Shown piece by piece: positions 2,299 to 15,312 of a stretch of 15,320 bases of DNA (the stretch's first letter is position 1; each line of letters begins with the position of its first letter). Where the stretch lies: positions 1 through 15,320 of the forward strand of contig NW_021825591.1 of the NCBI RefSeq assembly GCF_006345805.1. The letters are read 5' to 3'. Source of the DNA: Octopus sinensis. Its lineage: Eukaryota. The translations under genes and the position numbers were made by a program. The notes beneath the pieces are model-generated. The model saw only the letters and a list, made by a program, of their open reading frames with translations. It was not told where the DNA came from and made no database searches.

Positions 2299-2355
<57 letters not shown>

Positions 2356-2368
2356 AAGAGAGAGAGAA

Positions 2369-2399
<31 letters not shown>

Positions 2400-2453
2400 A
2401 AAAGAGAAAGAGAAAGAGAGCGAGAAAGAGAGAGAGAAAGAGAGAGAGAGAAA

Positions 2454-2494
<41 letters not shown>
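2299..2494. repeat. (GA)n / GAGAAA compound purine microsatellite
   Basis: Direct reading. It explains the RE-rich and SL-rich ORFs in the track. Confidence 0.97.
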
Positions 2495-2497
<3 letters not shown>

Positions 2498-3112: not shown

Positions 3113-3541
3113 TCAGCCTGTAATGATATGCATAAGATCTGGTCATCAAATCTAAGTAGAGACTTCAAACTTAAAATCTTCGAAGCCACAGTCGAACCAG
3201 TTCTACTATATGTCTCAGAAACCTGGACGTTATTAAGGAAGCTTGAGAGGCGGTTGGATGGAACCTACACTCGCCTCCTTATGAGAGCTCAAAATCTCTC
3301 GTGGGAGCGTCATCCAATCAAAGTACAAATATATGGGAAATTACCACCTGCATCATCTCTTGTGAAAGGTAGAAGAGTCCAGTTTGCTGGACATTGTTGT
3401 AGAGCTGAAAACGGTAATTTCTACTCTTCTCCTCTGGAAGCCATCTGCTCTCGATACCAGAGGGCGCACTCTCTCCTACCCTGATGTAATCTCCTGGGAT
3501 ACACGCATCCATCAACAGGGCTGATGATGATGATGATGATG
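3113..3541 (+). mobile_element. 5'-truncated RTE-clade (RTE/RTEX-like) LINE, 3' end of the RT ORF, frameshifted, with (GAT)n tail
   Basis: Translation SACNDMHKIWSSNLSRDFKLKIFEATVEPVLLYVSETWTL..RLDGTYTRLLMRAQNLSW..H....IYGKLP....RRVQFAGHCCR matches the RTE C-terminal pattern LLYGSETWT/RRLRFAGH. After a frameshift near 3412 it continues VISTLLLWKPS..RGRTLSYPDVI. It ends in (TGA)n at 3522-3541. Confidence 0.9.
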
Positions 3542-3632
3542 TTGGGGCAAGGAATGGATGTTATTGTTGTTGTTGGAAGAATTACTAGTAATAACGGTCG
3601 GTATGTAAAAACTTGTGCACAACGGGATTTAC

Positions 3633-3800
3633 TTCCCATTTTGCTTAAGTCGAATCGCACACATCCAAATATTTGATCGCATGATGTTTAATGAGGAAGA
3701 AACATTCACATTTCTACCCATTCCGCGGTTTATGTGATACGTTGAATTGTACATGTAATAGAGTTCAGAATTCCGTTTCAAATACAAGAGTAATTCATGG
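3633..3800 (-). CDS. Candidate coding exon A (168 nt, phase 2-2), paralog of 3974-4129
   Basis: Acceptor TTTTCATCAG with an upstream CTAAT branch-like site, and donor GTAAAT. The frame is open, with 30/39 aa identity to exon B over the aligned core. Confidence 0.55.
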
Positions 3801-3973
3801 CTGATGAAAATTACAGCACTATAAATTAGCAAAAAGGTGTTAAAAATTTGTTTTTAAATTTTAGTTCAGCTTGTCTAGAAAATATATGATAGATAAAACC
3901 AGACAAATGAAGGAGTTGATAAAGAAACCCCTATTAAAATGTCATGTTTCTAAGAAGAAATGATGGAATTTAC

Positions 3974-4129
3974 TTTGCATTTTGTTTAAGTCTAATCGCA
4001 CACATCCAAACATTTGATCGCATCATGTGTAATGAGGAAGGAATATTCATATTTTTGCCCATCCCGCGGTTTATGTGATACGTGGACGTGTACTTAAAAT
4101 AGACTTGAGAATTTTGTAAAGAAAATTTC
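3974..4129 (-). CDS. Candidate coding exon B (156 nt, phase 2-2)
   Basis: Acceptor TTTCTATCCAG and donor GTAAAT. The frame is open, with 16 differences and no indels versus exon A over 119 nt. Confidence 0.55.
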
Positions 4130-4974
4130 CTGGATAGAAATGTTTCATACTGGAATATCTGTGAAGCCAACTTATTTTCGGTGCAAATTTATATGGCATC
4201 AATATCCTGCCAAAATGAGATTTACCATCCCCAAAAGCATAAGCCAAATGCAATTATTGAAAGTTGTTACATTGAACCGGATTCATAAAGAACGCCGGCC
4301 TTTCGAAGATATGTCACACTGTTTCAAAAGTGGAAGGCGATTTATTTTAAAATCAAAGGTCAAAATAATGATAAGCGTAAAATATTGTTTACGATGGGTT
4401 TTAAATTGAATATGAGAGCAAAAGATATTTTCTGTAAAAGGCAATCGCAGAAAATACAATAAAGAAATAGTAATATTTTTATCAAATGATTTGTATGCAT
4501 TCACAAATGAGCAGATTGATATATGGAGATATGGATGTATTTGCCTGTTACATTTGTGGATGTACATACACATAGCTATCTATATATCAACCTCTCTCTT
4601 TCTCTCTCTCTCACCATCTCTCCCTTTATATATATATATATAAATTTAAATAATAAGAAAATGGAGAAAATTTTTAATCATCAAACAAACAAATTGAATT
4701 ACATCGGTTGATTGCTATTTAATACAACACATGACATAACATTCCTTACGGCCGTTTCCACTTCCAGTGTTGGTCGGTACTTACGTAGGACATTCCGAGA
4801 GTAATATTCGTCATGTCATCTTCATAGCACATTCTATTTATTCTGTTGTTACATGTACCCTATAAGCTGAGCATAGTGTACTTGCATACCCACACCCAGG
4901 GATAGCACAGGTAATTGATACCGATACTGTTATCTCTTAGTCGGTTACTACAACCGGTAACTCTGCCTGCCTTT

Positions 4975-4976
<2 letters not shown>

Positions 4977-5024
<48 letters not shown>
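4977..5024. repeat. (TA)n(TG)n microsatellite
   Basis: Direct reading. It abuts the tail of the SINE at 5026. Confidence 0.95.
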
Positions 5025-5025
<1 letters not shown>

Positions 5026-5420
5026 TCCTTTACTCTTTTACTGATTTCATCCAGAGGCTGGGGCCATGCTGGAGCACCGCCTTTAGTCGAACAAATCGAC
5101 CCAAGGACTTATTCTTTGTAAACCTGGTACTCCTATCGAACTCTTTTGTCAACCCCTAGGTTAACGGGTGGTAATCACATCAACTTCAGTTGTCAAGCGA
5201 TGCTGGGGAGACAACACAGACACACAAACATATCTACATACATTCATATATATATATATATAAGGGACTTCTTTCAGTTTCCGTATTTACAAGTCTTTAG
5301 TCGGCCTGATGTTATCGGGTCATAGTAGAAGATTCTTGCCCAAGGTGCCATGGAGTTGGACCGTATCTAGAACCATGTGGTTGGGAAGCAAGCTTCTTAC
5401 CACACAGCCACGTCTGTGCT
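5026..5420 (-). mobile_element. Near full-length, diverged copy of tRNA-derived SINE family 1
   Basis: Reverse complement aligns along its length to the plus-strand copy at 7530-7927 (e.g. GGCGGTGCTCCAGCATGGCC, CTTGACAAC, GGAAACTGAAAGAAG, AACCACATGGTTC). Confidence 0.9.
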
Positions 5421-5504
5421 TATACATATATAATATTTGTGGTGAATTGACTCTCGAAGTACATATAATTATATATATATACTTCGAAACTTTGCAGGAA
5501 AGTG

Positions 5505-5730: not shown

Positions 5731-5767
5731 ACTTTAATAGTATGTAACGACAATATGTATAAATATA

Positions 5768-5820
5768 AGGGGGTGCTCCAGCATGCCCACAGTCAAATGA
5801 CTCTAAAAGAGTAAAGGAAT
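5768..5820 (+). mobile_element. 3' fragment of SINE family 1
   Basis: GGGGGTGCTCCAGCATGCCCACAGTCAAATGACT..AAAGAGTAAAGG matches 7876-7927. Confidence 0.8.
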
Positions 5821-5867
5821 ATATCCGCACAGGGCGCGGGTTTTAAGCTAGTACTTATTTAAACTGC

Positions 5868-6621: not shown

Positions 6622-7529
6622 GTAAAGATTATTTGTTTGAAGGTGACAGTGTAATATGTATATTGATTTTAAAAAAAATATATTTAAGAGTTATGTCGAA
6701 ACTTCCGCTTTCGTTTTCACACATTTTAATCAAACACAATAATCGATCGACTGATGCTTGTGATAAACATGTTGTTATCAAACTGAAAAATATAAATGAA
6801 TATATAAATAATTATATGAATTAAATTTATATAACTGAATTGGAATTATATTTGTGAAAATAAAAATCATGTTTAAATCGCTAATGGGAAAGCTAAAAGC
6901 GAATAATACGATGCATCGAGAAAATAAATACAAAATTTACTATTCAGAAACCATAGATATGATTTTGATATAAGTTTTAATTACTAAAACTAATATATCT
7001 GTAAATTGAAATTTGGGGAATCTATTGAATTATACCATTAGATGTACTCTGAGTGGAAATACATGCATAAAACATCACCATGATTGTCAAGCTATTGAAA
7101 TGTAAATGGTTTGCCGACATATTGCATTATATCAGTTTTCATTTTCTTGAAGTAGTTTTCATAACGCACTTAACTGAAACAACTCATATGAATATTTATC
7201 TCTGCATAGACATTGCTGATTATGAAACTTAGATTATTATTCTGTCGATTTTCTGGTTCGTACCTCTCCTTCTAGAGGCAACGGTTGGGTATGGCTTGGA
7301 TGTTTCAATCAAATATGTCGGTTTAATATGCAGAATAATTTATTACGCCGCATCAAAATTTTATTTTCGATTTTGTATGAGATGCACACATTACAAAAAA
7401 ACTAATAAACAGAAAACAAAATAAACAACAAAAATAGAATATGCTGGGAATGCTTTTATTTATTTGTACTCTTCCTGCAAACTCCCATACAAGCACGTGA
7501 AGTTCATTAGATATATATATATAGATATA

Positions 7530-7924
7530 GGCGCAGGAGTGGATGTGTGGTAAGTAGCTTGCTAACCAACCACATGGTTCCGGGTTCAGTCCCACTGCGT
7601 GGCATGTTGGGAAAGTGTCTTCTGCTATAGCCCCGGGCCGACCAATGCCTTGTGAGTGAATTTGGTAGACGGAAACTGAAAGAAGCCTGTCGTATATATG
7701 TATATATATATGTATGTGTGTGTGTTTTTTTTTTTTTTTGTCCCCCTAGCATTGCTTGACAACCGATGCTGGTGTGTTTACGTCCCCGTCACTTAGCGGT
7801 TCGGCAAAAGAGCCCGATAGAATAAGTACTGGGTTTACAAAGAATAAGTCCCGGGATCGATTTGCTCGACTAAAGGCGGTGCTCCAGCATGGCCGCAGTC
7901 AAATGACTGAAACAAGTAAAGAGA

Positions 7925-7927
<3 letters not shown>
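7530..7927 (+). mobile_element. Full-length tRNA-derived SINE family 1 with internal (TA)(TG) microsatellite
   Basis: tRNA-like head GGCGCAGGAGTGGATGTGTGGTAAG...GGGTTCAGTCCC (A-box and B-box), internal microsatellite at about 7692-7740 and a purine-rich tail. Multiple homologous copies occur in this window. Confidence 0.92.
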
Positions 7928-7979
<52 letters not shown>

Positions 7980-8089: not shown

Positions 8090-8748
8090 AATTAATTGGA
8101 CTGAGACCATGCTGGTGTGCTGCCTGGAAATTTTAGTCGAACTTGTCAACCTATTTTAAAGCCTAGGTACTTATTCTATCAGTCTATTTTCGTGAAACGC
8201 CAAAGCACGGGGTCATAGATACACCGACAGTGAATGTCAAGTGGTGATGTGGTGTACACACAAAGATATATATTTACATACTAGCAGTATCGCCCGGCGT
8301 TGCTCGGGTTTGTAAGGGAAATAACTATATAAGCATTTTTAGAGAGTTACTTCCCTTATATAAACCGAGCAAAAAAAACCCATTAAAAATGTGGAAAAAT
8401 GATGGTAAATTTTTTTTTAAATCGTAGACTCATCGTAGACGCGCGGTAATACCCAGAAGGGCTCGATATGAATCATGACTATAAGATACCCGCTTTTGGT
8501 TACACTGTACCGCAAAATGTGGGAGTAGTTAGGAATCTAAATCGTAGGAGACAGACATACATACAACTTCAGTTTTATATATAAAGATATACGACGGCAT
8601 TTTTTCAGTTTCAGTCTACGAATTCCACTCGTGAGAATTTGGTCGGCCCGATGCTAATGTAGAAGGCATTTACCCAAGGTGCCATGCAGTGGGACTGAAA
8701 CTCGAACCATGTGGTTAGGAAGAAAACTTCATACCACACAGCTTCTCC
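8090..8748 (-). mobile_element. Old SINE family 1 copy split in two by a Helitron (3' half about 8090-8280, 5' half 8588-8748)
   Basis: Both halves align colinearly to the reverse complement of 7530-7927. Removing 8281-8587 rejoins the internal TA tract (CATA|TATACGACGG). Confidence 0.8.
8281..8587 (-). mobile_element. Complete 307-bp non-autonomous Helitron
   Basis: On the minus strand it starts TCTTTATATATAAAA and ends CTAG. A GC-rich hairpin (8293-8308) lies 8 nt from the terminal CTAG. It is inserted between A and T with no TSD. These are all canonical Helitron hallmarks. Confidence 0.9.
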
Positions 8749-10172: not shown

Positions 10173-10500
10173 CGTGTGTGTATGTATTTATACACACACA
10201 CATACATACATACACACATACATACATACATACATATACACATACATATTATACATACTTACATACATATATATACATACATACATGCATGCATGCATAC
10301 ATACATGTATGCATACATACATATTATACATACTTACATACATACATACATATATATACATACATACATGCATGCATGTATACATACATACATGCATGCA
10401 TACATACATACATACATACATACATACATACATACATACATACATACATACACACATACATACATACGTCGTACATACATACATACATACAGGTATACAT
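10101..10500. repeat. (TA)n followed by a long degenerate (TACA)n
   Basis: Direct reading. It explains the YIHT/MYVC ORFs. Confidence 0.95.
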
Positions 10501-10503
10501 ACG

Positions 10504-11215: not shown

Positions 11216-11307
<92 letters not shown>

Positions 11308-11326
11308 AATCTACCTATCTATCTAC
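11216..11326. repeat. (TATC)n / GATA microsatellite
   Basis: Direct reading. It is perfect to about 11306. Confidence 0.97.
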
Positions 11327-12198: not shown

Positions 12199-12310
<112 letters not shown>

Positions 12311-12316
12311 AAAAAA

Positions 12317-12367
12317 TTTTTTATCTAGTTTCAGCTCACAAGCTGTGGCCATGCTGGGGCACCGCCA
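12317..12367 (-). mobile_element. 3' terminal fragment of a SINE family 1 variant
   Basis: Reverse complement GGCGGTGCCCCAGCATGGCCACAGCTTGTGAGCTGAAACTAGATAAAAAA matches the family 1 3' end. Confidence 0.75.
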
Positions 12368-12436
12368 TTTGGTGTGCTACATGATTTTACTTCACGAATG
12401 CTTTTTAGAAATTGTCATTTGGTGCATGAGAGAGTT

Positions 12437-12723: not shown

Positions 12724-12895
<172 letters not shown>

Positions 12896-13190: not shown

Positions 13191-13209
13191 AATAATAATA
13201 ATAACAATG

Positions 13210-13249
<40 letters not shown>

Positions 13250-13474
13250 TAATAATAACGATAATAACGATAATAATGATAATAATAGTAATAATAATAA
13301 CAATAATAATAATAACGATAATAATGATAATAATGATAATAATGATAATAATAATAATAATAATAATAATGATGATAATAATAATAATAATAATAGTAGT
13401 AGTAATAATATTAATAATAATTAAAGTAATAATAATAATGATAGTAATAATAATATAATAATAATAATAATAAT
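13191..13474. repeat. Degenerate (AAT)n trinucleotide tract with GAT/AAC/AGT variants
   Basis: Direct reading. It explains the poly-Ile ORFs. Confidence 0.96.
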
Positions 13475-13480
13475 ATTTAA

Positions 13481-14179: not shown

Positions 14180-14392
14180 ATATTCTGTTTTGTCTGGGAG
14201 AGTCATTTTCTTTTTGCGCCTCACTGGTAAAATTTCCACTTTTTTCTTATTTTTATTGTCCTAAAATTTTCGTTGTGTCTTGCAACCTTTTCAATAAAAA
14301 TAATAAAAGAGTGGACATTTTTACCAGTGAGTGTGTTTCATAACAAGGCACAAAAAGAAAATGACTCTCCCCAGACACAACAAAACATATAA
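14180..14392. mobile_element. Second foldback/MITE-like element, unrelated to 5868-6198
   Basis: 14186-14258 is the imperfect reverse complement of 14292-14382 (GTCTGGG.AGAGTCATTTTCTTTTTG.GCC, CACTGGTAAAA, TTATTTTTATTG). The spacer is about 33 nt. Confidence 0.8.
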
Positions 14393-14905: not shown

Positions 14906-15043
14906 AAACATACCAGCATCGGTTGTCAAGCGATGGTGGGGGGACAAACACAGACACACAAACATATACACACATGTACATATATATATACATATATGCG
15001 ACGGGCTTCTTTCAGTTTCCGTCTACACAGCGACTCCTGCGCC
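14906..15043 (-). mobile_element. SINE family 1 copy with an internal ~118-bp deletion and 3' truncation
   Basis: Reverse complement GGCGCAGGAGTCGCTGTGT is joined directly to AGACGGAAACTGAAAGAAGCCCGTCG. The segment equivalent to 7549-7666 is missing. Confidence 0.85.
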
Positions 15044-15065
15044 GAAAATTGCCTGTATATAAATC

Positions 15066-15091
15066 ATATATATATATATATGTGTGGTGTG

Positions 15092-15130
<39 letters not shown>

Positions 15131-15171
15131 TATAATTTTAATACACCCACACACACACAGACATACAACAC

Positions 15172-15248
<77 letters not shown>

Positions 15249-15250
15249 TA
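15066..15250. repeat. (TA)n/(CA)n compound microsatellite
   Basis: Direct reading. Confidence 0.93.
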
Positions 15251-15312
15251 TCGACGGGCTACTTTCAGCTTCCATCTAATAAATCTATTCAGAATGCTTT
15301 GGTCGGTCTTCG
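15251..15312 (-). mobile_element. Fragment of the SINE family 1 5' half
   Basis: CGACGGGCTACTTTCAGCTTCCATCTA...GCTTTGGTCGG matches the reverse complement of 7637-7692. Confidence 0.7.

What the first reader, a model, noticed from the sequence alone, without database searches (positions are those of the whole stretch)
3633..4129. Tandem-duplicated symmetric exons encoding an unrecognised ~56-aa repeat
Seen: two copies 341 bp apart, with 119 nt aligned, no indels and 16 differences. Five differences are purely silent and most amino-acid changes are conservative (R/K, V/M, V/I, I/M, I/V, G/A). Amino-acid similarity extends upstream (NSQVYFKY vs NSELYYMY). Similarity stops just inside the flanking introns. 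Both copies have independent AG acceptors in phase 2, GTAAAT donors in phase 2 and lengths divisible by 3 (156 and 168). Inference: modular exon duplication under past purifying selection, compatible with constitutive splicing, skipping or mutually exclusive splicing.
Basis: partly seen in the sequence, partly recalled or inferred. Interest (0 to 1): 0.8.

Follow-up and report, generated by a model that had tools for sequence, protein, structure and literature searches.

The report
Duplicated 150-bp coding-like module in octopus
Two diverged copies of a 150-bp segment sit 341 bp apart in repeat-rich octopus DNA; they change the way coding sequence changes and carry splice-like motifs, so they may be two unannotated exons, but no known protein or transcript product matches them and splicing could not be tested.

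Summary
The repeat is real. Positions 3624-3772 and 3965-4113 are 149 nt long, 85% identical, free of indels and 341 bp apart. They are the only two copies in the window.

The window is Octopus DNA. One minus-strand frame is open in both copies. In that frame the amino-acid replacements are far more conservative than random placement of the same base changes gives (P about 0.004). Sixty control tests on non-coding repeats from the same genome all gave P above 0.05. A known LINE reading frame gave 0.005.

Classical dN/dS is only marginal (omega 0.37, p 0.056).

Against exons:
- The peptide has no relative among 5.8 billion protein clusters or 1.84 billion representatives, and the former includes Octopus sinensis RefSeq.
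- The flanks are unrelated, yet third codon positions are still 81% identical.
- Similarity ends inside the proposed exons on the acceptor side.

The unit is not the tail of the neighbouring RTE LINE, not an Rfam RNA, and not a high-copy repeat as far as I could test.

Verdict: a genuine short duplication. Unannotated or recently dead exons are the leading reading (about 0.45). A neutral non-coding duplicate is the main rival (about 0.3). Genome-wide copy counts and RNA-seq junction reads would decide.

The parts
3624..3772 (-). Copy B of the 149-nt unit. Two further matching bases reach 3776.
3965..4113 (-). Copy A of the 149-nt unit. 85% identical to B, no indels.
3773..3964 (.). Spacer between the copies. 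It resembles neither the sequence after copy A, nor anything else in the window, nor 20 kb of O. sinensis DNA.
3629..3832 (-). ORF over copy B. 67 codons plus TAA; the only open frame of six.
3970..4170 (-). ORF over copy A. 66 codons plus TAA, in the same frame as in B.
3633..3800 (-). Proposed exon B. 168 nt, phase 2 at both ends. An inference from motifs only.
3974..4129 (-). Proposed exon A. 156 nt, phase 2 at both ends. An inference from motifs only.
3627..3632 (-). GTAAAT after copy B. Candidate donor; contains the in-frame TAA; conserved between copies.
3968..3973 (-). GTAAAT after copy A. Candidate donor; contains the in-frame TAA.
3801..3802 (-). Candidate acceptor AG of B. It is the first AG upstream of the core. 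The 20 nt upstream are 60% pyrimidine.
4130..4131 (-). Candidate acceptor AG of A. It is the first AG upstream of the core, 12 nt closer to the core than in B. The 20 nt upstream are 55% pyrimidine.

Best explanation
The two copies are most likely a tandemly duplicated coding module read on the minus strand. That means two internal exons, A (4129 to 3974) and B (3800 to 3633), of an unannotated octopus-restricted gene or one that died recently.

Each proposed exon starts and ends in phase 2. Either or both could therefore be included without shifting the frame. Each would add a module of about 48 residues (xNSxxYxxYxSTYHINRGMGxNxNxxSSLxxMRSNxWMCAIRLKQNx).

Shown:
- the duplication;
- the shared open frame;
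- the conservative pattern of replacements;
- the conserved GTAAAT and the in-phase AGs.

Inferred:
- that these motifs are used as splice sites;
- that the module is or was translated;
- that only the exon core was copied, or that the two cores were later homogenised by gene conversion, since the flanks share nothing.
For: - Exactly one of six frames is open in both copies.
- The 14 replacements average +1.14 in BLOSUM62, against -0.14 for the same 23 base changes placed at random (P = 0.0002). Total score loss gives P = 0.0036 (A to B) and below 0.001 (B to A). The other five frames give P >= 0.11.
- Calibration: 60 tests on non-coding repeat pairs from this window and from O. sinensis had a minimum P of 0.057. 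The true LINE ORF frame gave 0.0048.
- Omega is 0.32 (NG) and 0.37 (ML), below 1. Synonymous changes number 8.5 against about 5 expected.
- There are no indels in 149 nt at 15% divergence, whereas five of the six other repeat pairs in the window show gaps.
- The stop is inside a conserved GTAAAT. Only 13-18% of stop triplets in the window follow a G.
- The nearest AG upstream of the core is in the symmetric phase in both copies, about 1/9 by chance. The 12-nt length difference is a whole number of codons.
Against: - The peptide has no relative. There was none at E <= 10 among 5.8 billion clusters. Among 1.84 billion representatives the only hit was a spurious 15-residue motif. Pfam and PDB gave nothing. 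The collection does hold O. sinensis RefSeq proteins and Logan-derived ORFs. Neither ORF is on record as a called gene.
- The number of amino-acid differences (14) is not below the neutral expectation (16, P = 0.2).
- Codon positions carry 8/6/10 differences, and the LRT for omega below 1 gives p = 0.056.
- Third positions are 81% identical, yet the flanks are at background similarity. A plain exon-plus-intron duplication does not fit.
- Similarity ends inside the proposed exons at the 5' side.
- The donor lacks G at -1 and +5.
- Stop-free stretches of 66 or more codons cover 56% of this microsatellite-rich window.
- The AlphaFold model is weak (pLDDT 66) and barely better than a control ORF from the window (57).
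Confidence: 0.45

Rival explanations
1. A neutral, non-coding local duplication. A segment of about 150 bp of intergenic or intronic DNA was copied once about 190 bp away, or duplicated in tandem and later split by an insertion. It has since drifted to 85% identity. The open frame, the GTAAAT and the AGs are coincidences of AT-rich sequence.
For: - No protein, RNA family or structure match of any kind.
- All three codon positions are about equally conserved: 83, 87.5 and 81%.
- The count of amino-acid differences is near the neutral expectation, and omega is not significantly below 1.
- Long stop-free stretches are common in this window.
- The frame stays open in 29% of random placements of the same changes.
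- Octopus genomes are 42-66% repeats (PMC13282606).
- The unit begins GGRATTT and ends GAATTY, a possible microhomology for the duplication (read directly from the sequence).
Against: - The conservative-replacement signal (P about 0.004) falls in exactly the one open frame. It was calibrated against 60 non-coding controls, none below 0.05.
- There are no indels.
- The in-phase AGs and the G before the stop each need a further coincidence.
Confidence: 0.3
2. Two copies of a low-copy interspersed element, such as a heavily 5'-truncated retroelement or a short non-autonomous element. Its 3' end would carry the last 48 or so codons and the stop of an element-encoded protein. The coding-like differences would then have arisen in active master copies before insertion.
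For: - Both copies share sharp boundaries.
- Similarity ends 8 nt after the stop codon, as expected where an ORF ends close to an element terminus. The neighbouring RTE shows that arrangement.
- Copies of the RTE LINE show the same kind of replacement signal.
- Octopus carries hundreds of unclassified SINE families (PMC13282606).
Against: - No further copy in the rest of the window, nor in 20 kb of O. sinensis or 41 kb of other cephalopod-like contigs, whereas the window's real dispersed repeat is found about four times in those 20 kb.
- No ORF from such an element is in the protein collection, whereas the RTE gave 106 hits.
- Two independent insertions of a rare family 341 bp apart, in the same orientation and with identical ends on both sides, is improbable.
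- No tRNA-like head, Rfam match, terminal inverted repeats or target-site duplication.
Confidence: 0.12
3. A functional non-coding element duplicated in place, either a small structured RNA or a regulatory module, conserved at the nucleotide level.
For: - Conservation is fairly even over codon positions and strongest in the centre of the unit.
- A weak hairpin around 3676-3740 is predicted in both copies on the + strand.
Against: - No Rfam family at gathering score, and only E > 2 noise otherwise.
- Fold z-scores are -0.7 and -0.95 on the + strand and +0.45 and -2.8 on the - strand, so they are not consistent between copies.
- A G-to-C difference in the hairpin stem is not compensated.
- This reading does not explain the frame-specific replacement pattern.
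Confidence: 0.05

Closest known systems
Tandem exon duplications and candidate mutually exclusive exons, as defined by Pillmann 2011 and Hatje 2017 (PMC5740500)
   Same: Neighbouring intervals on one strand. Similar lengths (156 and 168 nt). Same reading frame and phase. No in-frame stop. 67-70% amino-acid identity. GT-AG borders present.
   Different: No host gene is known. No transcript or junction evidence. No homologue of the peptide in any species. Similarity does not reach the acceptor. Third codon positions are not more diverged than the first two, and the introns share nothing. Known cases are mostly ancient and lie in conserved genes (PMC9741552, abstract).
Short local duplications and unclassified short interspersed repeats of Octopus genomes (PMC13282606)
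   Same: A unit of about 150 bp with sharp ends in a window dense with LINE, SINE-like and microsatellite sequence. Divergence (JC 0.165 between copies) lies in the range of the repeat expansions reported for octopus.
   Different: Only two copies were found, and they are adjacent. There are no SINE or MITE hallmarks. The substitutions are frame-specific, which the window's true dispersed repeats are not.
RTE-clade LINE of Octopus (annotated 'craniofacial development protein 2-like', XP_029651369.1)
   Same: It lies 82 bp from copy B. Like the unit, it has an ORF that ends almost at the end of the conserved sequence.
   Different: It is on the opposite strand. Five related copies (L001, L002, L003, L008, L009) all end at the (ATG)n tail and are followed by unrelated DNA, so the unit is not part of this LINE.

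Membership tests
Tandem duplicated exons / MXE candidates | Neighbouring intervals with significant sequence similarity | tested here: met
   149 nt at 85%, E = 4e-40. Peptides 67-70% identical.
Tandem duplicated exons / MXE candidates | Same reading frame, no in-frame stop, similar length (within 20 aa) | tested here: met
   One shared open frame; 156 vs 168 nt. The divisibility by 3 follows from the choice of sites.
Tandem duplicated exons / MXE candidates | GT-AG splice sites at corresponding positions | tested here: inconclusive
   The donor GTAAAT is homologous and conserved. The AGs lie outside the homologous core, 12 nt apart in register. This is compatible with a 4-codon indel or with chance.
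Tandem duplicated exons / MXE candidates | They lie inside a protein-coding gene whose product contains the peptide | tested here: not met
   No protein with this peptide among 5.8e9 clusters or 1.84e9 representatives. O. sinensis RefSeq is in the collection. No nearby ORF has a relative.
Tandem duplicated exons / MXE candidates | Spliced reads across the junctions | not testable with these tools
Tandem duplicated exons / MXE candidates | Purifying selection on the encoded peptide | tested here: inconclusive
   Omega 0.37, LRT p = 0.056. Conservative-replacement test P about 0.004, calibrated. Count of amino-acid differences is near neutral.
Dispersed repeat (SINE/MITE/truncated retroelement) | Many copies at unrelated loci | tested here: inconclusive
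   No further copy in the remaining 15 kb of the window, nor in 20 kb of O. sinensis or 41 kb of related contigs. This excludes only a very high copy number.
Dispersed repeat (SINE/MITE/truncated retroelement) | Pol III/tRNA-like head, terminal inverted repeats or target-site duplications | tested here: not met
   ARAGORN found none. Rfam found none. There are no terminal inverted repeats, and no matching flanks were seen by eye.
3' end of the adjacent RTE LINE | The unit follows the LINE in other copies of the family | tested here: not met
   All five related copies end at (ATG)n, with unrelated DNA after it.
Known structured RNA (Rfam 15) | Match at the family's gathering score | tested here: not met
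   Zero matches in the window. The best sub-threshold E-value was 2.4.

The most novel reading that the evidence does not exclude
These are real, spliced coding exons of an octopus-lineage orphan gene. Its ~50-residue module has no relative among about 15 billion predicted proteins. That would be a new protein repeat born recently and already amplified by exon duplication, and missed by every annotation.
Probability: 0.3. Interest if true: 0.5.

Novelty: new member of a known kind. Interest (0 to 1): 0.3.

Why it matters
If the exons are real, this is an unannotated cephalopod-restricted gene caught while growing by exon duplication. It would be a small but concrete case for the origin of lineage-specific proteins in a genome known for novelty. 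It would also be a reminder that octopus annotations miss such genes.

If the exons are not real, the locus is an ordinary micro-duplication in repeat-rich DNA. It then becomes a useful warning that an open frame, AG/GT motifs and 'conservative' changes can line up by chance.

The calibrated replacement test used here can be reused. It compares the observed changes with the same base changes placed at random. Non-coding repeats of the same genome serve as negative controls and a LINE ORF as the positive control.

Tried and rejected
1. Unit as the 3' UTR or tail of the neighbouring LINE. Rejected: five related LINE copies, including a 93% identical one from O. sinensis, end at the (ATG)n tail with unrelated DNA after it.
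2. Known RNA or conserved hairpin. Rejected: no Rfam match, inconsistent fold z-scores and an uncompensated stem change.
3. tRNA-derived SINE. ARAGORN found nothing.
4. Old tandem duplication of the whole 341-bp period. Rejected: the flanks are at background similarity, also when the LINE is removed in silico.
5. Spacer as a known repeat insertion. No match.
6. Other copies outside the window. The back-translated pattern scan and an 18-mer scan of JGI metagenomes, and a 17-mer scan of IMG/VR, gave only seed-length chance hits. A full-text search for four 14-15-mers of the unit found no paper.
7. Orthologous locus via called ORFs. A concatenate of six ORFs from 3421-4573 found nothing. Exact look-ups of the unit ORF and the LINE ORF were not on record. 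Cluster members of LINE hits were nearly all short ENA contigs, so more Octopus DNA could not be fetched.
8. AlphaFold2 on the two-sequence alignment. It gave two helices, pLDDT 66 and pTM 0.34, against 57 and 0.28 for a control ORF from the window. This is uninformative.
9. CpG retention as a sign of constraint. The window's CpG observed/expected ratio is 0.95, so this is uninformative.
10. TRIM-like reading (terminal direct repeats around a short internal domain). By eye there is no TG..CA, primer-binding site or target-site duplication. Not pursued.

Full report
**1. What is in the sequence**

The window is AT-rich (about 33% G+C) and full of microsatellites. The repeat finder reports one clean direct repeat in the region, 3624-3772 and 3965-4113. 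It is 149 nt long, 85% identical, 341 bp start to start and has no gaps.

Sensitive blastn and tblastn of either copy against the whole window find no third copy.

The flanks in the same register drop to 21-25% identity.

Gapped local alignment of the flanks scores no better than shuffles (P = 0.36, 0.95, 0.44). This also holds after taking out the LINE fragment that lies left of copy B (P = 0.16). The duplicated thing is therefore a discrete segment of about 150 bp, not a 341-bp tandem unit.

**2. Where the window comes from**

Positions 3113-3541 on the + strand are a 5'-truncated, frameshifted LINE. Pfam gives a sub-threshold DUF6451 match, and the protein ends in a typical RTE-like tail.

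Its protein has 106 relatives in the protein collection. One cluster includes XP_029651369.1, 'craniofacial development protein 2-like' of Octopus sinensis.

Twenty kb of the O. sinensis chromosome CM016860.1 (L008) contain a 93% identical copy of this LINE. They also contain four copies or part-copies of the window's 400-470-bp dispersed repeat, at up to 94% identity.

All five related LINE copies end at an (ATG)n tail and continue with unrelated DNA. The unit, which starts 82 bp further on, is not part of the LINE.

**3. The coding question: evidence for**

Only one of six frames, on the minus strand, is open in both copies. The ORFs are 3970-4170 and 3629-3832.

I placed the same 23 base changes at random on the same kind of base, and kept only outcomes that add no stop. 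Results in the open frame:
- The observed alignment loses far less BLOSUM62 score than expected: -52 vs -85 +/- 13, P = 0.0036. In the other direction P is below 0.001.
- The 14 replacements average +1.14 against -0.14 (P = 0.0002).
- None of the other five frames is significant; the best gives P = 0.11-0.13.

I calibrated the test on every other ungapped repeat block of at least 60 nt in the window and against O. sinensis:
- 60 tests on non-coding repeats gave a minimum P of 0.057.
- The true reading frame of the LINE gave 0.0048.

The unit thus behaves like the known coding sequence and unlike the non-coding repeats.

Further points in the same direction:
- There are no indels at 15% divergence, whereas five of six other repeat pairs in the window have gaps.
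- The frame-ending TAA sits in a conserved GTAAAT. Only 13-18% of stop triplets in the window follow a G.
- In both copies the first AG upstream of the homologous core is in the phase that makes the interval a multiple of three. The two AGs are 12 nt, or four codons, apart in register.

**4. The coding question: evidence against**

- Differences fall 8/6/10 on codon positions. Identity is 83, 87.5 and 81% at positions 1, 2 and 3.
- NG86 omega is 0.32, but an antisense frame with stops gives 0.29. ML omega is 0.37 with LRT p = 0.056. The synonymous excess has P = 0.03-0.055.
- The number of amino-acid differences (14) is close to the neutral expectation (16).
- The spliced 108-residue peptide has no hit at E <= 10 among 5.8 billion protein clusters.
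- A profile of the two copies, searched exhaustively against 1.84 billion representatives, finds only a repetitive protein. That protein shares a 15-residue motif with the profile six times.
- Pfam and PDB give nothing meaningful.
- The collection does contain O. sinensis RefSeq and Logan-derived ORFs. A normally expressed and annotated exon should therefore have been found.
- No ORF within 3421-4573 has any relative.
- Third positions are far from saturation, yet the flanks are unrelated. Either only the core was copied or the cores were homogenised by gene conversion.
- Similarity ends inside the proposed exons on the acceptor side.
- The donor lacks G at -1 and +5.
- AlphaFold2 gives a low-confidence helix-loop-helix (pLDDT 66), little better than a control ORF from the window (57).

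**5. Other readings**

No Rfam family matches, and predicted folds are not consistent between the copies.

There is no tRNA-like head, terminal inverted repeat or target-site duplication.

The unit is absent from 61 kb of fetched cephalopod-type DNA, and scans of metagenome and viral collections gave only chance seeds. A very high-copy repeat is therefore unlikely. A low-copy family cannot be excluded.

**6. Weighing**

A neutral non-coding duplicate needs several independent coincidences:
- one frame open in both copies;
- a replacement pattern at P about 0.004 in exactly that frame;
- no indels;
- a G before the stop;
- in-phase nearest AGs.

The exon reading has difficulties of its own:
- it must explain complete absence from all protein collections;
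- it needs a duplication or conversion confined to the core.

My rough odds, which are inference and not a computation:
- about 0.45 for coding exons, present or recently dead;
- 0.30 for a neutral duplicate;
- 0.12 for two copies of an element-borne ORF end;
- 0.05 for a functional non-coding element.

The divergence between the copies is JC 0.165. On the calibration quoted for octopus repeats (JC 0.09 about 25 My, 0.2 about 56 My from consensus; PMC13282606), and if neutral, this suggests an event roughly 20-25 My old. That is near the O. vulgaris / O. bimaculoides split, so orthologous loci should be informative.

**7. Comparison with what is known, and verdict**

The pair meets the sequence-only criteria used to nominate tandem duplicated or mutually exclusive exons: neighbouring position, similarity, same frame, similar length and GT-AG borders (PMC5740500). 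It fails the criterion of lying in a known gene, and the transcript criterion cannot be tested here.

Whichever reading holds, it belongs to a known kind, either exon duplication or micro-duplication.

Interest is modest.

Noticed in passing
window 3113-3541 (+): A 5'-truncated RTE-type LINE fragment. Its ORF runs 3128-3484, with a frameshift near 3415-3420, and it ends in (ATG)n at 3523-3541. It is 93% identical to a copy on O. sinensis CM016860.1. Relative to that copy and to L009 it lacks about 85 nt just before the tail, apparently deleted between an internal ATGATG and the terminal (ATG)n.
   Followed up: yes
window 4979-5436 (+), 7511-7967 (-); partial copies at 8576-8742, 14906-15026, 12270-12370, 5767-5824: A dispersed repeat of about 400-470 bp, probably a SINE-like element. 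Several copies lie in the window, and four copies or part-copies (up to 94% identity) lie in 20 kb of O. sinensis. I used it as the non-coding control for the substitution test.
   Followed up: partly
window 14186-14258 / 14292-14382: An inverted repeat with arms of about 75 nt at about 90% complementarity, about 35 nt apart. It may be a foldback or MITE-like element.
   Followed up: no
window 2299-2495, 10190-10502, 11216-11325, 13191-13475, 12206-12310, 12724-12888, 15056-15251: Long microsatellites: (GA)100, (ATAC)79, (TATC)27, (AAT)95 and several (TA)n. They create many long stop-free 'ORFs', so ORF length alone means little in this window.
   Followed up: partly
L001, L003 (ENA ERZ25072740), L009 (ENA ERZ907990, Tara Oceans PRJEB4352): Assemblies filed as metagenomes hold cephalopod-type nuclear DNA. 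They carry LINE copies 72-85% identical to the window's at the DNA level, and contigs of up to 50 kb with reverse transcriptase, integrase and PHD_Pygo hits.
   Followed up: no
window, whole: The CpG observed/expected ratio is 0.95 over the window. It is 0.53 in the LINE fragment and 0.28 in the 192-bp spacer between the two copies.
   Followed up: no
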